A stretch of DNA of 64,000 nt from assembly GCF_964204645.1 (NCBI RefSeq), contig NC_134035.1, forward strand, positions 12,990,451 through 13,054,450. Direction: 5' to 3'. The position numbers and the translations under genes were made by a program. Position 1 is the stretch's first letter, and each line of letters starts with the position of its first letter. The notes beneath the pieces were generated by a model, which was not told where the DNA came from, did not search any database, and saw only the letters and a program-made list of their open reading frames with translations. Shown here in pieces: positions 7,701 to 43,480 of this stretch. The stretch comes from Tubulanus polymorphus (lineage: Eukaryota; Animalia; Nemertea).

Positions 7701-9381
7701 TCTTTCACGTTCCGGAACGGATTCTTACAATCGGGATGAACTACTTTACTCTGATCACGCCAGATTTGTTGAGCAATGCTACAATACAAATACATACAGA
7801 CGAGGGTCACAAATTAATGAACTTTCTAATTTTCACATTTTTTTTCAGATCTTTACAATTGACTTCTTTCGTATCTTGTTTCGCAATGAAATACCAGGGG
7901 TAAGTTGCTCAAAAGTTGGTTAAAGATAACCGGCCGTTAAATACCATAGTTACAATGAAATTTCAATTGTCACCATATCAACTATCCACTGGTTAACTCT
8001 AACCAACCTTTGAGCAACTGACCCCAGGATTTTTCACGTTATTTCACATGCGTCAAGATACAATAGCATGAGCAGTTACTGATCACATTCGGATTAATGA
8101 AATTTCCTAAACATAGTTCGTGCACAAATTGTGTAAACTACAAAACAGATGCGGCATAGAAAGGGGATTGATCGCGACTGTCCGATGTAATTCAATAAAA
8201 TATCTATATTCTGTAGGGAGAAGCGCAGCGCGACTGGGGCAGATACGATACTTACAGACCCTCTTTAGTAAGTTGACCGGTTATAGTACGTTTCAACCGA
8301 GGTAGTGGCAGTAGATTCGTAGTAGCCGCAGTTGTCGTCGACGACGTCGTTTCTCGAGTCGCAGTTTGCGGTTCTATTTTAATACCGACAGTCTATAAAT
8401 ATAATACATTTAAACGGATAACATCGTAATCATATTTCTGTACAAATTAATCAGTGATCAACAGTAAGACCCTCAGTAACATCGTAATCATATTTCTGTA
8501 CGCATAAAACAAATCGAATCTTTATTTCTCAGCAGAAGAAAGAAACAAAAATACTGAAAATCAGGACCAGTTTGCAGCTGTACTAACCTGTACAGTGTTA
8601 AGAGCAGTAACGTTACTTGCCGTTGTTGTCGTTATTTTTGGAGCGATCACCGGTGGTTTTACCCGTAGTATCTGTTGATTTGAATTACTCGTTTGGTTGA
8701 TTTTCAATTGTTGCCGTTTCAACACCAGTTGCTGTTGTTGTTGCCGTAGAAACGACTGTCGTTGTTCCGGAGTCATCGAGCTGAAATGATGTTCGAGTTT
8801 CTGTTTTTGTTCCGGCGTCAAATTCAAATTGACAACTTGATTCCCGACCTAAAAATGAAGAAACAACAGTTCGACATTAAAACGCATTTTTGCAGCCAAA
8901 ACCTTTTCACGTCCCATTGTTGTTGTTGCCGTAGAAACTCCCTAATATTTCAAGAGGTAACTCCCATTTGTCAACAGAAAGAACAACAAGACACCAAAAA
9001 TTCTGTGATATAGAAAAAGAGTCAGAATTCTCTGATTTCAAGATGGGAAAATAAATCAGGAATTCCATGATTTACCCCGATCAGTAAGAACCGTGTAAAC
9101 CACAGAACTGCGGTAACTGGAGGCAGAATTGGAACTGAGGTAACTCGATGCAGAATTGGAACTGAGGTAACTCGATGCAGAATTGGAACTGAGGTAACTC
9201 GATGCAGAATTGGAACTGAGGTAACTCGATGCAGAATTGGAACTGAGGTAACTCGATGCAGAATTGGAACTTACTTTGATTTGAGTTTGTATTTTATTAG
9301 ATGACGGTGACGACACAACAGCACGACCAACAGAATGATGCATATTTAACACTGAATCACTGACCGCTTTCATATCACTTG

Positions 9382-29303: not shown

Positions 29304-32300
29304 ATGGCGTTAAAACCAGTAAGTGATACGTATTTTTGGAGTTATTTATCGAGAATCTGCCTTTTAATGCTGGTGACAAGTTTTAAAAGTGTTTTGATAA
29401 ACGGTGCCGAACAGTCAGGGGAACGTTACGATGATCTGTACGTGTCCGGGGTTGACGCGTATAACGAGGAAAGATGGTTCGAATGCGTGACTCTGATGGT
29501 TCAAGCTCTGGATTCGTATCGCGAATATAAACGCGATTTAACGCGTTGTCGAGTGACCTGTAAGCGTAGACATGCCGTTCAGAAATTACCGTCGAACTCC
29601 GATCATGACAATCGTGATAGATATTTAGATTTGATATTTTATGAGAGCGTCACGCGTAATGCGGATTGTCTGCGGAGGTGTAAACGCCAGATGTTCGGCG
29701 AGGAGGCAGAACTGGTCACCACTGATCCTGAAATAACCGAGGCGTTTAACAATCTAGAACCGTATAATTATATTCAACTTTGTTTTCACAAGGTAAATTC
29801 TTTACAGTTTATTCTCTCCTAATAACCTAATCATTAATTGGATGGGCTTGTGAAAATATCCGAGTGTGAAACTAAACCACTGCGACTTATTCTCCCAAAG
29901 TTTGATTTTATTTTTGAATTTTTTTCTATTGCTGGAATAAGGACCATGGTATTCCAGGGAATTATGAATTATCTTTAGCATGGTAGCAACTCAGGACCGG
30001 AGAGAAGGGTAAAATAGCTAAAATGGTCTTAAATCTTAAGATGTAAGACCGCTTTTAGACATAAAAAGTTCAAGGCCATAGGGTTGAATTATATATATTT
30101 AATTCAATATTCTTTATGTTTGTCCAGTTTTCACATAAAGTATCGCTGATGTACGTAGAGAATCCCTAACTAATAAAATCATGGAGAAGAAGTCTGAAAA
30201 GTTTCTTTAGAATTCGACTATAACCTGATATATCAGGTTATAGATAGGCCTAATGTCTATTTCAACCTGACTTGAGAGCATTCCAGGTGGCCTAGCTCAG
30301 TCAGTTTTGGTAGTACATACCTGATTAAGGTCTTAGTAGAACCAGAAAGCACAGGCAGTCAACCTAAATCATCATTTTTTAATCCATTTGAAACTGTATT
30401 GAAGGATATCCAAAAAGTCTTCACTGAAATGGGTTAAATGAAGAGAAGTGACTCCATGATTTGAAAGTTTAACAATATGTTTCCATGCCTTCGTACCAAA
30501 CTTCAGTTGGTAGGCATGGAGACATATTGTTAATGCTCTCAAGTCAGGTTGAAATAGACATTAGTCATCTTCAGTCTAGCTTTAAGGAAACTTTTCGGAC
30601 TTCATCTTTCTCATTTTATTAGAATGAGATTCTCTATAAATCGTCATAAGATGGATTAGTGTTGAATATTGCTGATGTTTTGTTTTTAACAGTTAGGTGA
30701 GAATCGACATGCCGCAGCTGCTGCTTATACTTACTTCCTCGGCAATCCTAAACATCAAACAATGATACGCAATATTCATCAGTATCGAGAAATGTCGGAT
30801 GTGAGCGATTCTGATTTCATCAATATGGAGGCTTATAAACATCAGGTGATCATATTCATTTATTCATTCATATCTTAAAACTTGTATTCATGTTAGATTT
30901 ATGTGTTTACATGAAATTTTCAAAGTAAGAAGTTAAGAAGTAGAAGTTTAGTTAGGCCTACGCTGCTGGATGTTTAGTATTTCATCATGTTCTTGTACTC
31001 GATCAGATTCTTTGAAAACTCTTTCTAAATGATAAAAGCTTTTCAAGGTGCTCGAAACACCTTTGATTTGAACAAAATGCCTGATATGTTTTAAAACTCC
31101 TTCAATTTTGAGAGTAGACAATAAGAAATGTTTTGTCTAGTTTATAGTTGTACAGTATGTAATTATGCCTAAATTGATACAGTTGGAACTTTTATACCCA
31201 ATTAGACAGTTACAAAATTAGAAACCGAGTATAGGTAGTGTCTAAGATTGAAAAAAATGGTACAGTCAAACAATTGGTAAAGATAGATATTACGGTTATT
31301 ATTGGGATTTGAAAGTGATTGTGGACATTTCTCCTTAAAAACTCCTTATATCCAGGAATACATGGACTCTGTCTATTGTTTCTATTCTGGATTACGTTTC
31401 ATGCAAAGAAGAAACTCTCTGAGTTTCTGTCGTCGCTGCCCCTGATGTTGATCTCGTCCTAGTTCTAGTTCTACCTATTACTGGTCAACTTCAACATGCT
31501 GAAGATATTTGCCAGGTACTGACTTATGTTGTTAAATCAGTGAGTCCACGAGCACTGATATGTGTCCTACCTGAATAACATGGTTTCACAAGGATTCGAA
31601 CCCACAACCTCTCGGTTGAGAGTCAAACACCTTATCCACCATGCCACAGGACAGGACAGTTTCCTGAGCATAATCTCGTCCGTTTCAACGATCGCGTATT
31701 TTACGAAGGTTGTACAATCTGATGAAACTGTTTTTGCGTTTGTAAATATTCGCGATCAACGTTTCGCCGAATATCGAAATCTGATAAACGTCTTCTCCGT
31801 GGACGTCGATGAGGACGGTCGGTTTATCGAACCCGGCGTCCTCCGTCCAACGAACGTGTAACAATATCGCGCGATATCCTCTCTCGAAATCTATCGATAT
31901 TATCAGATTATTATCGTCGATTATCGCTAATCCGGGACTGTACGGTTTATTACGATTACCACCGGTGGTAATCTCGTAATCATTCAGGAATAGTTCGATA
32001 TCTGCGACGTCCGATAGTTCCCCGTGTTCCGACAGTTTGAACAGTTTCAAATCGGAACTCGAAATCGCGAACTTGTTCCGTCTGAATACGACGAGACCGG
32101 GCCACGTCGCTAGGTAACCGACGGGCAGACGGAATCTCACGACCGACGGGGAGCGACGATCGATTATTTGAATCTCATCGAGATTGAACCTCGTCGCGAA
32201 ACGATCGTCGAGTAAATAGAGATAATCTCCGTAAATCGATATCGTCGATTTGAGATTGTTGCAAATATCGGAGATATCGATCATTCGATAGCTGATCAGA

Positions 32301-35300
32301 TTTGGATGATCGTAACGTCTCAGGAGACATCTCGAATTCTGGGCCGTAAGAATTATCAATCGGAACTTTTTGGATTTCCGATCGTCGAAAGCGACGCCTA
32401 GTATTTTATCGTCACGGAAATCGTAGTCGTTCGCCGGGAATGTATTGTTGTCATCGTCGCCGCGAGATACGACCTTGAGAATCGAACGTTTCCATTCGGC
32501 AACGGCGACGTACGACGCGTCGCGATTCGCGGCGATCAACTGCGGGAAAAACCCGACCGAGTATCGAGCGATCGGATCGAGTTGAACACGATAGAACGAA
32601 CCCGGCGCCGCGAGTCGGGTTTTCCTGTATCGTAGATACCCGATACCGTCACGCCAGTCCGGTAAACTTCCCGCTATAAACTCAATTCGATTTCGTTCTT
32701 CATACTCCGCGTTCACATTCTCGTTCATCATTTCGTTCATCATTTCGGTTATAACGATATCTCCGATATTTATCTCGTTCAATCTCGCGATATCTCGATA
32801 GATTTTCTCGATTCTCGTTCTGCGTTCGTTCAGTATCGTGCGTCTGCTTTCTCTCCATCGCTTTAAACTCGATATTAAAGCGTTTTTATTCACCTCCAAC
32901 GATATCGATATCTCATCGACTTGATTCCTGATATCGGCGAGCGTTTTATTATAGCTTTCATCGATTCCTCGTATGATATCGTCCATCTGTGAAATATACT
33001 CCGGTATCTGGTGGTTCCTGCCCTCACCCTCAGCAGCAGCAGCAGCTGCTAGTAAAATTACCAACCATTTTACTGTAGCCATGATCAGATGATAGTATTG
33101 TGTCTAGTATCATAACCGGGTCAGTTATTTATCAAGTCCAAGATGTATGTCTATGGTATTTTCCGTGTCACATTCTTTTCCTGCCCATTGACTCTGATGT
33201 TTACATGTAGTTTTATCTTAAAATCTTCCAGGGTCCGCTGAAAAATGTTATATGCTAAGATTTTTAAATATCAGAAACTCCTTTAATTTGAGCAAACTCC
33301 TTTAAAACTCTTTCAATTTTGAGAAAAAGGCGAATAGAGATGTTCATCTAGTTTTTCGTTGTACAATAAACTACACCTCGATTGGTACAGTTGGGATTTG
33401 TGCTCATCCAATTAGGCAGTTGCTGAATTAGACAAAAATTTGACAGTAAACAGTTCCAACTTTGGAGGAGTCTACTGTAATTGAGATATGAAAGTGATGC
33501 AGACACTTCCTCGAAATATGAAATTGTCTCCTTAATAACTCCTCGAAATCTCTTTTTATCGAGGATTACCTGATCTACAGGTCAACCCTGAATGTTATGT
33601 TGATTGTCAACCGTGATTGTCAACGTCAACCCTGAATGTTATGTTGATCGTAGTGTAATATATTTTCAGCAATTGTATTCAAAAGGAAGTCGCGATTACT
33701 TAGAAGAGAAATGGTTAGACGTTATAGATCGAATGGAAGGAGCGATCGCTGGATTCATGGAACAATTAGAATCTTGCGAAGCAATGTGCGAAGAAACAAT
33801 AAATCATCGCAATAGAAATACTGACTTCGTCGTAGCCTTAGCAGGTATAACCGTTAGTCCAGTTGCACAGTCATGACTTACGTTTAAAAGTACATCTCAA
33901 TTTCTAAGACCAGTCTTAAGTTGTTTGATTGGTTGAAGAACTGGGTTGGTCTTAGACTGGTCTTAAGTCTCAGCCATGACTATGTGACTGGGCCATCGGT
34001 CTAGTTCATTAGTTCTTGGTTAAAACCTGATTCTTCAGGACCCAGTTCCACTGAGTTAGAGTCAACTCTGAGTTAAAAACAGTACATTTTCAATGAGTTA
34101 ACTCAGAGTTCAATCTTAATTTGGAACTGTGGAACTGGACCCAGAGTAAAAACAATATTGTACCGGTTTATTTTTCAGATCATTACAGCGATGTGATTAA
34201 ATGCTCGTCTAAATGTTCAAACAAACTATCAACGGTTCACGGAAAGTTTGTATTTGATTATATCCCTGATCATTATAACTACCTTCAATACGCTTATTAT
34301 AAACGTAAGTTCAAGTTTTATCCCAATGATAACTGATAACTGATGCTTACTATAAACTATTATCTCATGTCTGAAATGTGTTGTGTTTCAGTGAATGATT
34401 TCCGTAATGCCGCTCGATGCGTTCAGTCATATCTATTGTTTAAACCGACCGATGAGAATTTACTGCACAACAAAAAAATTTATCTCAGCATGCCGGGAGT
34501 GAGAGAAACTGATTTCAAACCGAGACCGGTAAGTAGTTGTAATGATGCTCTACTGATCATTGCTGCTGAATGAGACCACTGTTTTCTGTAGGGTTAAATG
34601 CAGCTTTTAAAAACCTTCAGAACTGAGCGCTTCACAATAAAGCCTCATTGAAGAGGAAACCACAATAAAGCCTCATTGAAGAGGAAATGTTTAAGTTGCC
34701 CCCTGATGATCTCCAGAGATGTTATAGTCCAGAGCAGGCCATCATTCTGCCTTTTTGGACAAGGAAAACCTCACAGACCTCAAAAAATCTTCTTTGAGAC
34801 TGGTCTGTTTTATCAATAGTAGGCCCTACTTGTTGAAGGATGTCTTGAGAGGTGTCTGATGATATGAAAGTGGTTTTTTGAGAAGTACATAATGTACTCG
34901 TGGAGAGTTGGTTTCCATGGACAAATGACTGCCGAATTCAATTTTAGAAAAAACCCACAATAAAACAAAGCAAAACTAATAGAGCAATTGTCAATTTGAT
35001 TCAAATGTAATGAGCCATTTTCACAACAGATTCATTTCTCAAGTACAGTTTTTACAACTGTCCATTTCTTTCTATGTACATAATGCTTAAAGTTTAGTAG
35101 ATTTGGGCTGAAAGTCAACACAATTCTTCATACAGACCGCCCTATAATTCAGTTTTATGAAACGATATTTTTCTCCTAATTTTAATGTTAACTGCTGTAT
35201 TTATATTTCAGGAGGCAGTTAGACTACACAATAGACACGCGGATGAGTCAGCTTTATTGAAATACTTAGAAACGCTGTATACAACATCTGAGTCGCGATA

Positions 35301-38300
35301 CTACAAACCAGTTAATGTAAGAAGCCTTCCTCTCAATATCCCTGAACTTTTAACTTTATGTTTTTACAGGCATAGAAATGTCTTATTCAATAGTCATTAA
35401 CCTCATACCTCAAATATGTAGTGCTTAAAACATGAACAATTCTCACATCTGTATCTGACACTGTGTCATTCAACCTGGTTTCACAAAGCTGTTACCACAA
35501 AGTTTAGATAGTGGAAATCCTATGTTCCCTATGAATGGGAGGTGGCTATGAAAATATTTCCATGAATTCTGAAAGTGTTTATTCATCGCCAAAAAAAATC
35601 ATTCACTTAAAAAATCTGAACGTGTAGTGTCCGGGTTATATAGGGAATTCTGACTGTTTTCTTGAAAATCAGTGAATTCGTATTTCCTATGTCTTGGTTA
35701 TTCTTGCTGGTGATGAGTGGCACAAGGAACCTCTTAAGAATGAACAGCCCTCAGGATATCTTAAGATTTAATCAGGGAATTTTCGGTCAAGAGTCTGGGA
35801 AATATTGGGAAATTTTAGATTCCTTGATTTGTAAGGCCCCCTGAAATTTGACTGTAAAGTCTAATTTCACTCACACCTGCGGAGCTGGGTCCGGACCAGA
35901 CCCTGATGTCCAATCGAAAAATTCTCTATGAATTAAATGTTTTTCAGATCCTAAAGAAGCCCGTTGACCTTGATGACCCGATTAAAATGTATTTATCATA
36001 TCTACGAACCCGCTATACGCAAAACGACAACAATGAAGAAGAATCGCTACGGAAACCGAATGTTCCGAACGTCGTATTCGAAACGAAAGAAGAAGATAAT
36101 TTTCTGTTTAAACATCAAATGAAAACGTTTGAACGTCGAGGGATCGAAACCGTGCGTAGAGACGCGGAACTCGGCGGAGATAAAAGAGTCGTCGTTAATG
36201 GATTATTATCTAGATATCAGTGCAAACAACTCATTCAAATAGCGCAGGTATGTATCAATGAAAATGTATCACTACCAAGCTACATGAAAAAAAGAGAATC
36301 TTAAGCCTGAAACTGATAGGTTTTGAACTGTTAACGAATATTGATATAAAAATACCAGCCCCGGGTAGTTGCTGTGTAGGTTAGCTGATTTCATAAGAAA
36401 TCACAAGTTTTTGCTTCTAGTGCATAGGTAAATCAGTGAACAAGTAGTTCTTTGTAGGTTAACTGATTTCATTTAGAAATCATATGCTTTCACTGCTGAT
36501 GCTTCATCAGGTATATTAGGTAGTACTGCATAGGTAAAATCTACTTGTTTTCCTACTAATAGAGCAGAAAGTTTTACTTTTCATGAAACTGTACGTTGAC
36601 CAAGTTTCACAGTTGTGAGGTAGTTTTGAGTTTAAGTAAATGTTTTCTGTTTTCAGTTGGGAGGAGTCAATAGTTTTGGACGTACGGATATACCGACTAA
36701 AGTAAACGATTTGCTGAAACTCGGAGTTGAATTGATACGAGATTTAAAACTAGATAAAGCTACTGAGGTATGGCGTTCAGTTCAACAATCCTCATAGAGT
36801 AGAATATGAGAAATTCACTCTTAATTCATTCATTTCATTTCTTGTTTCTCAAAGCTGGCAAATTTAGGCACGTTGAAATGGGACGCGACCGAAGCCTATA
36901 TGGAAATGGTTGAATTAGTTCGCAGTTACTTACAAACATATTACAACCGCACTGTGTTACACTTTCAAGATATACAACTCGTTTGTAGACAAGTCAAAAC
37001 CGGTAAAATCATCTTCTGAACTTTGATTCCAGGATCCAGTTCCACAGTTGTTCCAGGATCCAGTTCCACAGTTGTTCCAGGATCCAGTTCCACAGTTGTG
37101 AGTTAACCTTTGACTTGTTAGAACAGTTAGAATATTGAATATGAACCTCTGAGTTAACTCTAACTCTAACTCACAACTGTGAAACTGGAACCAGGGTTTG
37201 AAATACAGGAAAAGAAGTTCACCTGTAGAGTTAATCTTAACCCCAAACTGCGGAACTGTGTCCTCGATTTTCTGGTGGTTTCCAATGGATTTTAAAGAAC
37301 TCAGTATTATGTGTTTTAGATGTCAAAGTGCCGGAGTTAGTTAAACAGAAAACGTGCGTGCCACAAGAAGATGGAAGCTGCCGGAAATTAGACAATTCTC
37401 AATCGTCCCCGTTCAGGTTCGTTTGTTACTATAGTAAGATGAGAGACTACAACAATACAATCAGTTCAACAAGTGTCTCCAGATTATTTGAATTTTAAAT
37501 TCAAATCTTCTCGTTCTTGATTTAATGCAGGGCTGTTGTTTTTCTGAATAACGACTTCGAAGGAGATGGAAAGTTTTATTTCGACGATTCAAATCGTAAA
37601 GCCTCGGAACAGGTAAAAACCACGCGACATTCATTTAACAACTCGTCTTGGAAACGTATATTCGGGTATCTGAATTTTTGGGTCATTTTTGTAGGTATCA
37701 GTGGCTCCCTCTTGTGGAACTATGGTCGCGTATCGTGGTACTGATCAACATAGAATAGGAACGATTTCTTCGAATGATCGCTGCGTTTTATCGGTCGGTT
37801 TAACATCCGATCAAAACGATCGTAACACCGATTTTCTGACCGCAAAGCGCCACCTAGCAGTAGCTCGCATGAACGGATATGTTTTTTCGGAAGAGAAAAT
37901 TTTAGGCGATAAAATGGCGGAATTTAAACGAGAAGGTGTTTCCATATCTATGGATGAAACAGAACTGAAAGGTGAGATTCAAAATGTGATCGCTGTGTTT
38001 AAGAATCCAACGTTCAGCTGAACTACATGTAATAGTTAAATCCCAGTCACTAAATGGTTCAGGTTTTACTAATATGCTACATTTGCCGCAGATGACAAAA
38101 TGTCTGAATGTCTCTAATTTATAAAATTGCAACCTATTGTGGCTCCAACTGCCCCACCAAAATTCACCTGCTGCTTTAGTGAAGGTTTATTCATCCCGTC
38201 AGATCCGATGCAACCATGCAGTCAACTGTAGTTCAGATGTAACATGAATGTAATGATTTCAGGTGCCGAAAGAGTTGCTGCTGATGGTGTTATAACTGAT

Positions 38301-41300
38301 GAACAATGTAATAGTCTTGTTCAACTTGCTAAGGTATGTGTGTAACCTTAGTACATGTAGTAGACTCAAAGCAGAGTCTGTGTTACATGCCTTCCGATGA
38401 TAATTTTTAACTATGACTGTTTACTGGGTACTACTGCCCCCTGCCGCCAACTGGGCATCACTCAGCGCATTATTAAGAGGTTTGAAATTTGATTGGGAAT
38501 AACTTCGAAGAGGCTTGATCAATGGTTCTTACTGATTCAAAGGAAATCAGGGAATTCAGGCTCTTTTCCTGCAAATCTGGTAAATTTGAGTTTTTGGTAT
38601 CTTGTTGTTCTCGCTGGTGATGAGTGGCACAAGGAACCTCTTGATAAGAAACGGCCCTCACTGAGGATATCTTATAATTTAATCAGGGAATTTGAGTTTT
38701 TGGTGTCTTGTTGTTCTTGCTGGTGACGAGTGACACAAGGAACCTCTTGATAAGAAACAGCCCTCACTGAAGATATCATATAATTTAATTATTTAATCGG
38801 GAATTTGAATTATTGGAGTCTTGTTCTTGCTGTTGACAAATGGTAAAGGGAACTTCTTGATAAAAGACAGCCCTCACTGAGGATATCAAGGAAGGAGGAA
38901 TTTTAGATTCCCTGATCTGTAAGAACCATGATCTCAAGTTGTTGCCCCTGATAATTTATCTATAACTGTTTTATGATGTATATGTATTGAATTGTATTAT
39001 CAGATGGGAGGATTGACGAACGACGGCTACGACGATAAAACATCCGACAAAAAACATGTTTTATCTCCTCATTCGGCTTACGAACATTTCATCGGTGTAA
39101 ATATACGCCGAGCGTCACAGGTAGCGACAACACAAATCATCACTGAACTTTCTGTCGTTCCCAATGTTAACATTTTTATCACTTTTCTTTTGATTCCAAT
39201 ACAGAGCTGCCAATTGGTCGTGATTTTCAGCATCCGTTACTGTTTTTATAACTACAAATACTGATTTGATTTGTTTAACGCATTTACAGAAATATGAAAG
39301 ATGTTACTGTAGGTCTTACTGTTGATAACTGATTAATTTGAACATAAATATGAAAGATGTTACTGAGGGTCTTACTGTTGATTACTGATTAATTTGAACA
39401 GAAATATGAAAGATGTTACTGAGGGTCTTACTGTTGATTACTGATTAATTCGAACAGAAATATGAAAGATGTTACTGAGGGTCTTACTGTTGATTACTGA
39501 TTAATTCGAACAGAAATATGAAAGATGTTACTGAGGGTCTTACTGTTGATTATTGATTAATTCGAACATTTTCTTTCATATTTCAATGAAATGTTACTGA
39601 AAAAGATTATATTTGTTACTGATAGCAATCATCAGACGTTGGCAGCCCTGTAAATATGATAAAGGTGGTTGGAGAGAGATTGTGTTTAAATGAATTTAAA
39701 GCTCCCCACATAAAATGATATTACTCTTTTGAAATGCAGTTTTATGCGGTAATGAATTTTCCAGTGCTCTATAGTAGAGCAATAGTAGTCTATAAAAGCT
39801 CGTCATTATGAACACAGTCTGTCTATGAATAACCCTGCCATCATTTAACATTTTATTCTTCCTCTTGCTTATTTACGGGGAACCTTTGATTCAAATCCGG
39901 CAAAACTAAAGCTTTCAGAATCATAATGTAAGGGATCATTCATTTATTACGTACGCATAAAATTTGAATTTTTCAACCCCCCTCCCCCTCTGTATGCAAA
40001 ATCGGCCATTTTTTCATATACGTTAAGCATTACAGTACGCATTGCGCTGAAATCCTCCCCCTCCCCTAATGCGTACGTAATAAATGAATGACCCCTAATC
40101 AAAAAGCTAATTGAGATATATCTTGATGCTGATGGGCTTTGTGTTGACAGTTCCATAGGTCTGAGTAAGACGAAAATTATTTCATAGTTCACCAAATTTT
40201 TTCTCAGAACTGTGGAACCGAATTTTAACTTTTGGTTTCTATTTCAGCTTTTGATGTTGTAGTAACTTGTATCGGGAATTTGTGCACTTCTATCATTACA
40301 GTTGTTTTACTTGACCCAGTTCCACTGTTATAACGTTAGTCTTCTGGTTGAATCATTGATGAAACACTCCTTGAGTACATGTTGTAACAGAAATGTAAAA
40401 TCCTCCCACAGTCTGAGAATGAAAAGTCTGAGCTAGTAGTTTGATATTCATCTTCTGGGGCCACTTTTGGTCTTAAGTTTTGACTATGGAACCGGCTCCT
40501 GGGGCCAGTTGCACAGTCGTGACTTAGGTCCAAAAATGGCCCAATCTTAAGACAGGTCTTAAGTTGTTAGATTGGCTATAGAACTAAGTTGGTCTTAGAT
40601 TGGACTTAAGTCTTTAGCCCTGACTATGCCACCGGCCCCAGGAACTGGATAACAGTATTCCGAAGATGACGTTTAAACGTTGAATAAACTAATAGCTCAA
40701 TCAAACATTTCGGAAAATTTTTCCTCCTTATACAGAGTGGAATTTCATATTATGGTTGAAAATGATATAAACTGATAACCCTGGAACCGGGTTCGTGTTG
40801 TTAATTATTTCATGCAGTTCAGTTTGAGATTGTTTACTTTCATATTATTTTCGTTTGAATATTTTGTGCGTATTTTGTTTAATCAGAATGAAGCGCAGCT
40901 CGGTGACGGATACTTGCGCTCGTTGCTCGGTAATTTCGCCGATATTTCTCCGCATACGAACAATGAAATGTTTCAAGGTTTAACGATTGACGATGCCGGA
41001 GAGGTTCGTTGTTGACGGTTTCAGTTATTTGGCACGAATTTGAACGTTGTTCTTACGCATGTCACGCATGTCTTACGCATTACTGAAAATGTGAAATATA
41101 GTGAATTGTCAAAAAATCGCGGCAAATCATTGTGAATAGATAATTTGTACGTATCTGAAAATATCCGTCAAGGCTCAATTTATACGATTCTTGAGATACA
41201 AGATCCTCAATTGTCAGTATCCCGCCTCATAGTTTTACCTTATAGTGGTATCCCAGTTGCCTTTGATTTTTAAGTTTCTACTCGAGACAACATAGCAAGC

Positions 41301-43480
41301 AATGAACTCAAACGCTATCTAATTGAGATGTCAGAAATTACTGTCCCGTCGCGATAGTTTCATTTCAATTATTAGTATCCCTACGAAAAATTTAGTACGC
41401 CCCATATACGGGGATTCTACGTAAAATTGAGCCCTGTCAGTTATTAACTTTGCATTTGCATACTTAAACCGATACCACTTTCATTGATTCGATAGTAAAA
41501 TCTCAGTAGAGCTACAAATAATACAGTAGACTGTTCCTTACTTGCATCTCATTTGGTGCCCATTTTTGCTGTGAGGTGATACTCACAGATATTCTATTAC
41601 AACGATAGTTCTGAAATATGTATTTGAATTACCAGACAAGAGAGGAAGGAGTCTACTGAATGTATATTATATAGATTTACACAGCTTCATAGAATATTCT
41701 GTAGATGTTTCTTAGTAGATCATGCTTATTTACTATCTGTCTCAAGCATAATCAGCTTTTACTGTATATTGCACTCAGTGAGGTGGCCCGACCACCTCCT
41801 CGATGTAAATGTAAGTCACCGAAACAGTTTATATCTTAATGTAGACATCATTCTTCACAGATTACTATCGATCCATTAAAATTTTAATTTTTTCAAATTT
41901 TTCTTTGAACAGCTGGCGTCGAAAGGCGACGTCAAACCGGCGGACGTGAAATTATATTTGGACGCGAGTGAAAAAGCGAAAAACGTCGTGGAAACGTATT
42001 TTCAACTGAAGAGACCGTTATATTTTGATTTTACTCATTTAGTTTGTCGCACAGCCCTGAACGGTACGTTACGGAATTAGATCGAGGTATTCATCGATTG
42101 TTTGATTTCAATTTTGAGATAATTATCTGCATTTTCTTCTTGTGTTTGTATCATCCAGAAACGAATAAAGATCGCGATGATTTAAGTCACCCGATACATT
42201 CAGATAATTGTATCATACAAGAAGATTTCACTTGTCGTAAAGAATTACCAGCTTATACGCAACGTGATTACAGGTATTATAACTCACCACACCCGTGCAG
42301 GGCTGGGCCGGGCAGGGGGCGGTGGGGTGAATTACTGGCTCAAACACAACGAGATTACAGGTATTATAACTCACCACACCCGTGCAGGGCCGGGCCGGGT
42401 TTGGGGGGAGAATTACTGGCTCATACACATTACTCTTATTAAGAGAAAATGAATTACTAACACCAGACATTAGACATTTTATCAGCATACTTTCAAAAAC
42501 TGATCGTCCACACTTCACATGTGTTCAGTGCTTCACCTGAGACGCTTTTAATCGTAAATGAACTACAAACACCAGACATAAGACATTTGATCGTCCATAC
42601 TTCATTGTTGTGTTCAGTTCTTCACCTGAGATATCAGACATATTATCAACACATTTTCAACAACTAGTGGTGAATGCCTGAAGGGGGGTACAGCTACAAG
42701 GCTGAACTAGGGGTCTATCTAAGATTTGTGTATTCTATTTTTCAGTGCCTTGTTATACCTGAACGAGGATTTTGAGGGTGGAGAATTTATATTCGCTCAC
42801 AGAAATCTATCCACACAGGTAAATAATATAATAGTTAAACAATTTGTACTACAGGATGGCGCCACTTTCCACCCGTTTACACAAATCCCCTGAGTTTTCC
42901 CTGATTTTTCCATGTGATTTCACAAAATTCCTTGAGTCAATCTGAGAAATTTCTAGGATTGAAAATTAAGTCATTTTTCATCGAATCGCATATTGACAAT
43001 AAAATGCGTGGTCAATATCATACCAGAATTCCATAAGTCTTCGAGGTTTTTGGTAAGATTTGTCAAATTCCCTGAGTTCTGATTTTTCTAGATATTTCTG
43101 ATTCCTTGAGTTTTCCAGGTCAGTGGCCACCCTGTACTACTACAAAGTTATTATTTGGCTCAGTTTGTAATCTATCAGTTATATTCATCATTTGACAAAT
43201 TGTTGTGATTAAAAAAATCAAGGATTTATACTTTTCGTTGAAATATTTGTAGGTTCTGGTTAAACCGAAATGCGGACGTTTAGTCGGTTTTAACGCGGGG
43301 GTCTACCACGGAGTGAAGGCCGTATTGAAAGGTCAGAGATGCGCGATAGCGATGTGGTACACATTGGATCCGTATTACAAAGAACAAGCTCATTCAACCG
43401 CCAGAGAAAAACTCATCTCGATCGGTAAAACTAGCGGTACTGGCGACACCGGAGTTAACATCATTAAAGATGAACTTTAA
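29304..43480 (+). CDS. P3H1: Leprecan/prolyl 3-hydroxylase family protein with two dioxygenase domains, about 984 aa. Exons: 29304-29792, 30693-30845, 33670-33844, 34179-34304, 34392-34528, 35212-35316, 35948-36247, 36657-36767, 36855-37002, 37320-37416, 37531-37612, 37695-37971, 38263-38333, [39004-39120 or 40887-41003], 41913-42063, 42159-42273, 42746-42818, 43253-43480
   Basis: Signal peptide; CxxxC/TPR region (CRVTC, CLRRC, PYNYIQLCFHK, CEAMC, HYNYLQYAYYK); catalytic motifs FTHLVCRTA, SHPIHSDNC, RDYSALLYLNEDFEGGEF, KPKCGRLVGF, YHGVKAV..GQRCAIAMW; ends KDEL*. Symbol is family-level only (P3H1/2/3 co-orthologue). Confidence 0.92.
30150..30640. mobile_element. Foldback element in P3H intron 1
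   Basis: taatgtctatttcaacctgacttgagagcatt (about 30251) is inverted at about 30532-30563, with weaker complementarity further out. Confidence 0.6.
31581..31652 (-). mobile_element. tRNA-derived SINE head or tRNA pseudogene (CTC anticodon-like loop)
   Basis: Reverse strand GTCCTGTGGCATGGTGGATAAGG...CTCTCAA...GGGTTCGAATCC has A and B boxes; stems imperfect. Confidence 0.65.
31685..33082 (-). CDS. Nested intronless gene in P3H intron 2: signal peptide + coiled coil + probable beta-propeller (TRIM/NHL-like tail), 465 aa
   Basis: 1398-nt uninterrupted ORF with the host-like CpG-rich codon style; MATVKWLVILLAAAAAAEG signal; helical residues about 28-130; IEF...GIGYL linker; short beta strands with turns (YVAVAEW, ILGVAFD, ISIYGDYLYLLD, GLAIIDDNNLIIS). 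Confidence 0.85.
   Translation of the reverse strand: MATVKWLVILLAAAAAAEGEGRNHQIPEYISQMDDIIRGIDESYNKTLADIRNQVDEISISLEVNKNALISSLKRWRESRRTILNERRTRIEKIYRDIARLNEINIGDIVITEMMNEMMNENVNAEYEERNRIEFIAGSLPDWRDGIGYLRYRKTRLAAPGSFYRVQLDPIARYSVGFFPQLIAANRDASYVAVAEWKRSILKVVSRGDDDNNTFPANDYDFRDDKILGVAFDDRKSKKFRLIILTAQNSRCLLRRYDHPNLISYRMIDISDICNNLKSTISIYGDYLYLLDDRFATRFNLDEIQIIDRRSPSVVRFRLPVGYLATWPGLVVFRRNKFAISSSDLKLFKLSEHGELSDVADIELFLNDYEITTGGNRNKPYSPGLAIIDDNNLIISIDFERGYRAILLHVRWTEDAGFDKPTVLIDVHGEDVYQISIFGETLIANIYKRKNSFIRLYNLRKIRDR
37028..37194. mobile_element. CCAGTTCCACAGTTGTGAGTTA MITE with triplicated left end; relatives at about 24080-24280, 34035-34142, 63177-63250
   Basis: gatccagttccacagttgtgagttaa ... 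taactcacaactgtgaaactggaac; three tandem 24-bp copies of the left end. Confidence 0.75.
39202..39650. mobile_element. MITE (CAG[A/G]GCTGCCAA TIR, TA flanks) carrying an expanded 56-bp array (about 5 copies); single-unit copy at about 21216-21431
   Basis: cagagctgccaa ... ttggcagccctg termini; unit gaaatatgaaagatgttactgagggtcttactgttgattactgattaattcgaaca. Confidence 0.75.

What the first reader, a model, noticed from the sequence alone, without database searches (positions are those of the whole stretch)
39004..41003. Two homologous 117-nt exons: probable mutually exclusive splicing in the active P3H domain
Seen: 39004-39120 (MGGLTNDGYDDKTSDKKHVLSPHSAYEHFIGVNIRRASQ) and 40887-41003 (NEAQLGDGYLRSLLGNFADISPHTNNEMFQGLTIDDAGE). 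Both are 39 codons, phase 0/0, AG...GT bounded, and align without gaps at DGY, SPH, E.F.G. Known: P3H1 has a single GDGY...SPHT.NE.F.G segment. The DGY-SPH loop is charged in one exon and hydrophobic in the other. Inference: an exon switch that changes substrate or partner specificity. Deep divergence with conserved motifs and length suggests long-term selection on both.
Basis: partly seen in the sequence, partly recalled or inferred. Interest (0 to 1): 0.85.

Follow-up and report, generated by a model that had tools for sequence, protein, structure and literature searches.

The report
Alternative paralogous exons in P3H
A ribbon-worm collagen prolyl 3-hydroxylase gene has two old, related 117-base exons coding for alternative versions of one flexible loop beside the active site; public RefSeq models already list the isoforms, and the same exon pair occurs in molluscs, annelids, brachiopods and bryozoans.

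Summary
Exons at 39004-39120 (A) and 40887-41003 (B) are each 39 codons, phase 0/0 and AG/GT-bounded. They match in register at 11/39 residues (shuffle p about 2e-5). A profile built only from other species' exons finds exactly these two stretches in the window.

NCBI RefSeq already models this Tubulanus polymorphus gene with three isoforms:
- X2 carries A only.
- X3 carries B only.
- X1 carries A and B in tandem.

So alternative use is annotated, but strict mutual exclusion is not. All combinations stay in frame, and I found no mechanism that enforces exclusion.

New here:
- The exon pair sits at the same intron positions in a second nemertean, in more than 15 molluscs, and in annelids, a brachiopod and a bryozoan. 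A coral locus, a tunicate locus and human P3H1 have one copy.
- The exon corresponds to human P3H1 residues 492-523.
- AlphaFold models of both isoforms give the same strand, flexible loop, strand and helix start. By topology this is the PHD2 beta2/beta3 substrate-selectivity loop.
- Paired GCATG motifs lie just downstream of exon B in nemerteans and two annelids.

This is an ordinary kind of feature, but old and undescribed in the papers I could search. Elsewhere in this genome the scan noted candidate exclusive exon pairs only in unrelated genes.

The parts
29367..43480 (+). Whole prolyl 3-hydroxylase (leprecan-like) gene. It has 19 coding blocks, two tandem 2OG-oxygenase-like domains and a C-terminal KDEL.
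   Evidence: RefSeq isoform X1 (P0398, XP_074659758.1) maps exactly to the window in 19 blocks. TPR_leprecan Pfam hit on 33604-33873. The last exon matches human P3H1 641-688.
38265..38333 (+). Constitutive exon upstream of the pair. It ends the helix that precedes the alternative module. Donor is AAG|gtatgt.
   Evidence: The same exon end (Cys plus 8 residues) is found in Lineus, Helobdella, Lingula and Crassostrea.
39004..39120 (+). Exon A. 39 codons, phase 0/0, with a charged DGY-to-SPH loop and a weak donor (gtagcg). It is the only one of the pair in RefSeq isoform X2.
39121..40886 (+). Intron between A and B (1766 nt). It holds a 56-bp tandem array (39286-39624) and a small inverted-repeat element (39931-40096). 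It is too long for steric exclusion.
40887..41003 (+). Exon B. 39 codons, phase 0/0, with a hydrophobic loop, the canonical ISPHT..E.F.GLT motif and a weak donor (gttcgt). It is the only one of the pair in RefSeq isoform X3.
41057..41070 (+). Two GCATG motifs 9 nt apart, 54 and 63 nt downstream of exon B. Candidate Rbfox-type intronic enhancer (a lead only).
   Evidence: These are the only two GCATG in the 3.6 kb between the flanking exons. Similar motifs lie downstream of exon B in Lineus, Helobdella and Capitella.
41913..42062 (+). Constitutive exon downstream of the pair. Its third residue aligns with human P3H1 Q526, a CRTAP contact. It ends in the ..THLVCR strand that carries the 2OG-binding Arg.
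   Evidence: PMC11381544.

Best explanation
Exons A and B are tandem paralogues. They encode alternative versions of one structural module in the active (second) 2OG-oxygenase domain of a two-domain collagen prolyl 3-hydroxylase. The module is a short strand ending in DGY, a flexible loop of about 11 residues, the SPH..E.F.G strand and the first turn of the next helix.

The splicing machinery joins the upstream exon (ending at 38333) to A, to B, or to A followed by B, and then to the exon starting at 41913. This gives enzymes that differ only in that loop. The exon pair predates the split of nemerteans, molluscs, annelids, brachiopods and bryozoans.

Shown:
- the exons and their homology;
- the annotated isoforms;
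- the conservation across phyla;
- the shared predicted fold.

Inferred:
- The loop is the counterpart of the PHD2 beta2/beta3 loop. Swapping it would therefore retune which peptide sequences (collagen sites) or partner the hydroxylase accepts.
- Exon choice is set by trans-acting splicing factors acting on weak splice sites, possibly Rbfox on exon B, rather than by a hard-wired exclusion mechanism.
For: Sequence checks.

RefSeq isoforms of this very gene: X1 has both exons, X2 has A only and X3 has B only, with peptides identical to the window.

Isoforms in other species:
- The same A-only and B-only isoforms occur in Lineus longissimus, Haliotis (2 species), Littorina, Patella, Gigantopelta, Pomacea, Babylonia, Crassostrea, Saccostrea, Ruditapes, Dreissena, Mya, Mizuhopecten, Octopus and Watersipora.
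- In Lingula, A occurs alone, while B occurs only together with a third cassette.

Genomic structure is conserved, phase 0/0 with the same flanking intron positions: Lineus 102/129 nt, Helobdella 93/108, Lingula 96/105, Crassostrea 96/117. Unannotated copies are present in Owenia and Capitella.

RNA-derived full-length contigs of relatives carry B only (P0167, P0168, P0183) or A only (P0185, P0187, P0328).

The loci of a coral and a tunicate have one copy, and so does human P3H1.

Structure:
- The exon aligns to human P3H1 V492-K523.
- It lies directly before the CRTAP-contacting Q526/E527.
- AlphaFold2 models of the X3 and X2 catalytic domains (pLDDT 89 and 88) have matching helices and strands in and around the alternative module, and low confidence only in the DGY-SPH loop.
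- The fold matches human P3H1 and then PHD2-substrate complexes.
- The order helix, hairpin loop, strand, long helix, DSBH strand I matches the PHD2 order alpha2, beta2/beta3 loop, beta4, alpha3, betaI. In PHD2 that loop sets substrate selectivity (PMC5007464).

Both alternative exons have donors further from consensus than the constitutive upstream donor.
Against: - I saw no RNA reads for this species. RefSeq XP models are computed, and I could not inspect their support.
- Isoform X1 contains both exons, so the pair is not strictly exclusive, and the relative abundances are unknown.
- The tree of the exon peptides (36 columns) is unresolved. Tubulanus A is no closer to Lineus A (8/34) than to Lineus B (13/39). 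A single ancient duplication is therefore parsimonious but not proven.
- The equivalence with the PHD2 loop rests on the order of secondary-structure elements, not on a residue-level superposition.
- No substrate data exist for any spiralian P3H.
Confidence: 0.75

Rival explanations
1. The exons are strictly mutually exclusive. Every functional mRNA carries exactly one of A or B, and the both-included and both-skipped models are annotation or splicing noise.
For: - The two exons are homologous and of equal length and phase in this species.
- A-only and B-only isoforms recur in about 18 species.
- A tandem double copy of a strand-loop-strand module inside a compact domain looks structurally awkward.
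- The sister enzymes P4HA1 and P4HA2 use mutually exclusive exons (PMC12525012).
Against: - RefSeq X1 of this gene and the X1 models of many relatives include both exons.
- Two RNA-derived full-length contigs (P0173, P0413) carry both.
- In Mytilus only A-only and A+B forms are annotated.
- None of the known enforcing mechanisms applies. The intron is 1766 nt, all combinations stay in frame, the splice sites are U2-type GT-AG, and no docking/selector pairing was found.
Confidence: 0.3
2. The exons are two independent cassette exons with no coupling. All four combinations are made in appreciable amounts, and the double-inclusion form is a normal enzyme with an enlarged insert.
For: - All four combinations are annotated in Haliotis, Crassostrea, Ruditapes, Dreissena and Patella.
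- Every combination is in frame.
- Lingula even has a third 72-nt cassette.
Against: - Skipping both exons removes the invariant DGY, E and G positions of the domain, so it probably gives an inactive protein.
- Several species have A-only and B-only forms but no both-included model (Gigantopelta, Mya, Pomacea, Mizuhopecten).
Confidence: 0.2
3. Exon A is a decaying or unused duplicate that is only occasionally spliced in, and exon B is the real exon.
For: - B carries the canonical motif and is more conserved across phyla: mean identity 48.5% for B against 34.9% for A.
- Tubulanus A and Lineus A sit on long branches.
Against: - A keeps an open frame, both splice sites and the invariant D-G-Y, P-H, E, F and G positions, despite only 43% nucleotide identity to B.
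- A 5' partner exon is retained in five phyla.
- An A-only isoform is annotated here.
- AlphaFold folds the A isoform as well as the B isoform.
Confidence: 0.05

Closest known systems
NCBI RefSeq models of this same gene: prolyl 3-hydroxylase 2-like isoforms X1-X3 of Tubulanus polymorphus (XP_074659758.1, XP_074659759.1, XP_074659760.1)
   Same: Identical exons. X2 has A only, X3 has B only and X1 has both.
   Different: These are computed models with no description. They do not say that the two exons are paralogues, that the pair is conserved across phyla, or what part of the enzyme it encodes.
Mutually exclusive exons of vertebrate collagen prolyl 4-hydroxylase alpha subunits P4HA1 and P4HA2
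   Same: A collagen prolyl hydroxylase of the same 2OG-oxygenase superfamily, resident in the ER, that makes isoforms through alternative homologous exons (PMC12525012).
   Different: A different enzyme family (4- versus 3-hydroxylase) and a different position in the protein. Those exons are reported as truly exclusive. Here a both-included isoform is annotated.
PHD2 (EGLN1) beta2/beta3 loop
   Same: A flexible hairpin loop between the N-terminal helices and the long helix that precedes the double-stranded beta-helix. In PHD2 it closes over the substrate, and its residues set NODD/CODD selectivity (PMC5007464). The alternative exon encodes the element at the same place in the fold.
   Different: PHD paralogues differ in this loop through gene duplication, not exon choice. 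The equivalence here rests on topology only.
Human P3H1 (PDB 8K0E and related entries)
   Same: The closest solved structure: TM-score 0.75 and 42% identity to the modelled domain. The alternative exon aligns to V492-K523, and the next exon begins with the CRTAP contact Q526/E527.
   Different: Human P3H1 has one dioxygenase domain and one copy of this segment, with a short 4-residue DGY-to-SPH loop.

Membership tests
Leprecan / collagen prolyl 3-hydroxylase family | N-terminal leprecan-type TPR region | tested here: met
   Pfam TPR_leprecan scores 32.3 bits (cut-off 27) on the exon at 33604-33873. Precomputed PF23557 is recorded on the RefSeq protein P0314.
Leprecan / collagen prolyl 3-hydroxylase family | 2OG-Fe(II) oxygenase domain with the H-x-D...H iron triad and the 2OG-binding Arg residues | tested here: met
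   Second domain: H146, D148, H214, R128 and R224 are invariant in alignment A1. They correspond to human H587, D589, H659, R569 and R669. The fold matches 8K0F at TM 0.75.
Leprecan / collagen prolyl 3-hydroxylase family | ER retention signal | tested here: met
   The protein ends in KDEL at 43466-43477.
Leprecan / collagen prolyl 3-hydroxylase family | Prolyl 3-hydroxylase activity on collagen | not testable with these tools
   This needs an enzyme assay.
Tandem-duplicated alternative exons | Adjacent exons that are homologous to each other and encode the same structural element | tested here: met
   (homology). (same predicted secondary structure at the same positions).
Tandem-duplicated alternative exons | Each exon occurs alone in mature mRNA | tested here: inconclusive
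   RefSeq X2 and X3 are annotated, and RNA-derived contigs of relatives carry one exon.
Strictly mutually exclusive exons | No mRNA contains both exons or neither | tested here: not met
   RefSeq X1 contains both. Both-included and both-skipped isoforms occur in many relatives. RNA contigs P0173 and P0413 contain both. All of this is annotation-level evidence for this species.
Strictly mutually exclusive exons | An enforcing mechanism: steric hindrance, frame shift with NMD, U2/U12 incompatibility or competing RNA pairing | tested here: not met
   The intron is 1766 nt. Both exons are 117 nt, so every combination is in frame. All four splice sites are GT-AG without a U12 donor motif. No docking/selector arrangement appears among the repeats; the RNA-pairing test was shallow.

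The most novel reading that the evidence does not exclude
The exon pair is a lophotrochozoan-wide switch that probably dates to the Cambrian or earlier. It swaps the substrate-lid loop of a collagen prolyl 3-hydroxylase, so one gene yields two enzymes with different collagen-site or partner specificity. In nemerteans and annelids the choice of exon B would be driven by Rbfox binding to the paired GCAUG elements just downstream of it.
Probability: 0.3. Interest if true: 0.6.

Novelty: new member of a known kind. Interest (0 to 1): 0.42.

Why it matters
Prolyl 3-hydroxylation of collagen is site-specific, and what makes a P3H choose its sites is poorly understood even in humans. This case offers a natural experiment kept by selection in at least five animal phyla: two enzymes that differ only in a loop of about 11 residues and its flanks, at the position that sets substrate choice in the related PHD2. 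Comparing the two isoforms could point to the specificity determinant of the P3H family. It is also a clean, deeply conserved example of tandem exon duplication for studies of how splicing evolves. The isoforms are already in RefSeq, so the discovery value of the window finding itself is modest.

Tried and rejected
- PDB searches with either 39-residue exon alone found nothing. A profile of the whole domain was needed.
- Own-genome searches with each exon found only the exon itself. A domain search found only this gene, so no paralogue was detected.
- The search for homologous proteins with the 95-residue open stretch around exon A found no candidate. No short transcript fragments of this species are in that collection.
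- The maximum-likelihood tree of 56 exon peptides is unresolved. A and B labels cluster more than chance, but only within mollusc classes. Orthology of A exons between phyla cannot be shown.
- Searches for direct and inverted repeats that could act as docking and selector sites found only transposon-like and AT-rich pairs. I rejected these as evidence.
- Steric, NMD and U12 explanations for exclusivity were rejected on the sequence.
- A search for the Rbfox C-terminal Pfam family in this genome gave nothing, and it gave nothing in the control genomes either, so it is uninformative.
- TGTGT motifs showed no consistent placement.
All full-length isoforms used are database proteins returned by the tools.

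Full report
**Observation**

The two stretches are exactly as described. Window 39004-39120 (exon A) and 40887-41003 (exon B) each read 39 codons without a stop. Each follows an AG and precedes a GT. The exon before them ends at 38333 with a good donor (AAG|gtatgt). The exon after them starts at 41913 behind a long pyrimidine tract. All four boundaries are phase 0.

In register and without gaps, the two peptides share 11 of 39 residues, with a BLOSUM62 score of 31. Shuffling one peptide 200,000 times reaches that score with p about 2e-5. BLASTP gives E=1e-4. Nucleotide identity is 50/117, spread evenly over codon positions, so the duplication is old.

As an independent test I built a profile from the homologous exons of other species only. 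I scanned all 3,477 stop-free stretches in six frames of the 64-kb window. Only exon B (E 5.5e-12) and exon A (E 1.9e-9) match, and the next hit has E 0.6.

**The gene**

The exons lie in a plus-strand gene that spans 29367-43480.
- It has a leprecan-type TPR region (Pfam).
- It has two tandem 2OG-oxygenase-like domains. The first has lost the motifs.
- It ends in KDEL.
- The nearest solved structure is human P3H1.
- A domain search of the whole assembly finds only this gene.
The database proteins below confirm that.

**The isoforms are already annotated**

A search with the last exon against protein representatives returned two-domain orthologues from molluscs and a leech. A region search with the Lineus orthologue then returned the RefSeq protein of this very gene. 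Its cluster holds three isoforms:
- X1 (XP_074659758.1, 1002 aa) carries A followed by B.
- X2 (XP_074659759.1, 963 aa) carries A only.
- X3 (XP_074659760.1, 963 aa) carries B only.

The peptides are identical to the window translations, and X1 maps exactly onto the window. These are computed models and I could not inspect their read support. I never joined window exons into a model of my own. Every full-length protein I used came from a tool result.

**Conservation**

The same pattern recurs widely.
- Isoforms with only the 5' exon and isoforms with only the 3' exon are annotated in Lineus longissimus, two Haliotis species, Littorina, Patella, Gigantopelta, Pomacea, Babylonia, Crassostrea virginica, Saccostrea, Ruditapes, Dreissena, Mya, Mizuhopecten, Octopus and the bryozoan Watersipora.
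- In the brachiopod Lingula the 5' exon occurs alone. The 3' exon occurs only with a third 72-nt cassette.
- Both-included forms are annotated in most of these species. Both-skipped forms are annotated in about ten.

The leech Helobdella model holds both exons. In Lineus, Helobdella, Lingula and Crassostrea I located the exons in genomic DNA. All are phase 0/0, AG/GT-bounded and sit between the same two flanking exons. Their lengths are 102/129, 93/108, 96/105 and 96/117 nt.

The profile also finds an unannotated second copy in Owenia. In Capitella it finds an unannotated pair separated by only 68 nt.

One copy is present in the loci of a coral and a tunicate, in human P3H1, and in the proteins of horseshoe crabs and a centipede.

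Full-length RNA-derived contigs of relatives carry only the long type (P0167, P0168, P0183), only the short type (P0185, P0187, P0328), or both (P0173, P0413).

The pair is therefore at least as old as the common ancestor of these lophotrochozoan phyla, unless it arose repeatedly at the same spot. The exon tree cannot settle this. With 36 columns it is unresolved, and Tubulanus A is no nearer to Lineus A (8/34) than to Lineus B (13/39).

In molluscs, Helobdella, Lingula and Lineus the 5' exon has the shorter DGY-to-SPH loop and the 3' exon the longer one. In Tubulanus both loops have 11 residues and differ in charge. The 3' exon is the more conserved: 48.5% mean identity across phyla against 34.9%.

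**What the exon encodes**

A profile of the domain aligns the alternative exon to human P3H1 V492-K523. The next exon begins two residues before Q526/E527, which contact CRTAP in the cryo-EM complex (PMC11381544).

AlphaFold2 models of the catalytic domains of X3 (exon B; pLDDT 89) and X2 (exon A; pLDDT 88) show the same elements in and around the module:
- a helix;
- a two-residue strand at DGY;
- a loop of about 20 residues with low confidence;
- a seven-residue strand at E.F.G;
- the start of a helix.

The model matches human P3H1 (TM 0.75) and then PHD2-substrate complexes. The order of elements is helix, hairpin loop, strand, long helix, first strand of the beta-helix. This is the PHD2 order alpha2, beta2/beta3 loop, beta4, alpha3, betaI. 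In PHD2 that mobile loop folds over the substrate, and its residues set NODD versus CODD selectivity (PMC5007464).

I infer that the exon choice swaps the substrate lid of the hydroxylase, and perhaps tunes the neighbouring CRTAP-type interface. This step is inference from topology, not a residue-level superposition, and no activity data exist.

**How the choice is made**

None of the known hard-wired exclusion mechanisms fits.
- The A-B intron is 1766 nt.
- Inclusion of both exons or of neither keeps the frame.
- All splice sites are U2-type.
- The repeats in the introns are a 56-bp tandem array, a 106-110-bp array and small transposon-like inverted repeats, not docking and selector pairs.

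Both alternative donors (gtagcg, gttcgt) are further from consensus than the constitutive one, as expected for regulated exons.

One lead emerged. The only two GCATG motifs in the 3.6 kb between the flanking exons lie 54 and 63 nt downstream of exon B. Lineus has four within 300 nt downstream of its exon B, Helobdella two and Capitella one. Over eight species this flank holds 9 motifs against 2.3 expected (Poisson p about 7e-4), while the three other flanks are at expectation. Downstream GCAUG is the classic Rbfox enhancer position; that rests on general knowledge, not on a test here. The motif was examined post hoc and is absent in the molluscs, Lingula, Owenia and Watersipora, so it remains a lead.

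**Comparison and novelty**

The closest precedent in kind is the pair of mutually exclusive exons in the collagen prolyl 4-hydroxylase subunits P4HA1 and P4HA2 (PMC12525012). Full-text searches found no paper on alternative exons in any P3H.

The feature is a new member of a known kind, namely tandem-duplicated alternative exons. Its isoforms are already in RefSeq.

The scan has noted other candidate exclusive exon pairs in this genome, but only in unrelated genes.

**Verdict**

Interest is moderate.

Noticed in passing
window 35948-37973 (+): The first of the two dioxygenase-like domains has lost the DGY/SPH motifs and shows no H-x-D iron motif in the exons I read. Its counterpart of the alternative exon (36657-36767) is single and is not recognised by the exon profile. 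In Lingula and Capitella the first-domain counterpart still has the canonical motif.
   Followed up: partly
window 31685-33082 (-): A 465-residue open reading frame lies on the opposite strand inside an intron of the P3H gene. It is probably a nested gene.
   Followed up: no
window 39286-39624, 38583-38899 and 39931-40096: Intronic repeats. There are five to six copies of a 56-bp tandem unit just downstream of exon A, and three copies of a 106-110-bp unit upstream of exon A. There is also a 28-nt terminal inverted repeat pair 110 nt apart, which resembles a miniature transposon.
   Followed up: no
L008:22119-22220 (Owenia fusiformis) and L007:7590-7700, 7769-7864 (Capitella teleta): Homologous exons that the deposited gene models omit. 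In Capitella the two copies are only 68 nt apart, short enough for steric mutual exclusion, and the longer-loop copy comes first.
   Followed up: partly
L005:38288-38359 (Lingula anatina): A third, unrelated 72-nt phase-0 cassette exon follows the pair and is combined freely with it in eight RefSeq isoforms.
   Followed up: no
window 42272-42440 (+): Directly after the exon that ends in ..AYTQRDY, the intron repeats that exon end and its continuation twice in the same frame (RDYRYYNSPHPCRAGPG..). This is a local tandem duplication of the exon-intron junction.
   Followed up: no
P0287, P0428, P0430 (Littorina, Pomacea, Babylonia): In caenogastropods the 5' exon also has an alternative donor that adds four residues. 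This gives a further isoform.
   Followed up: no
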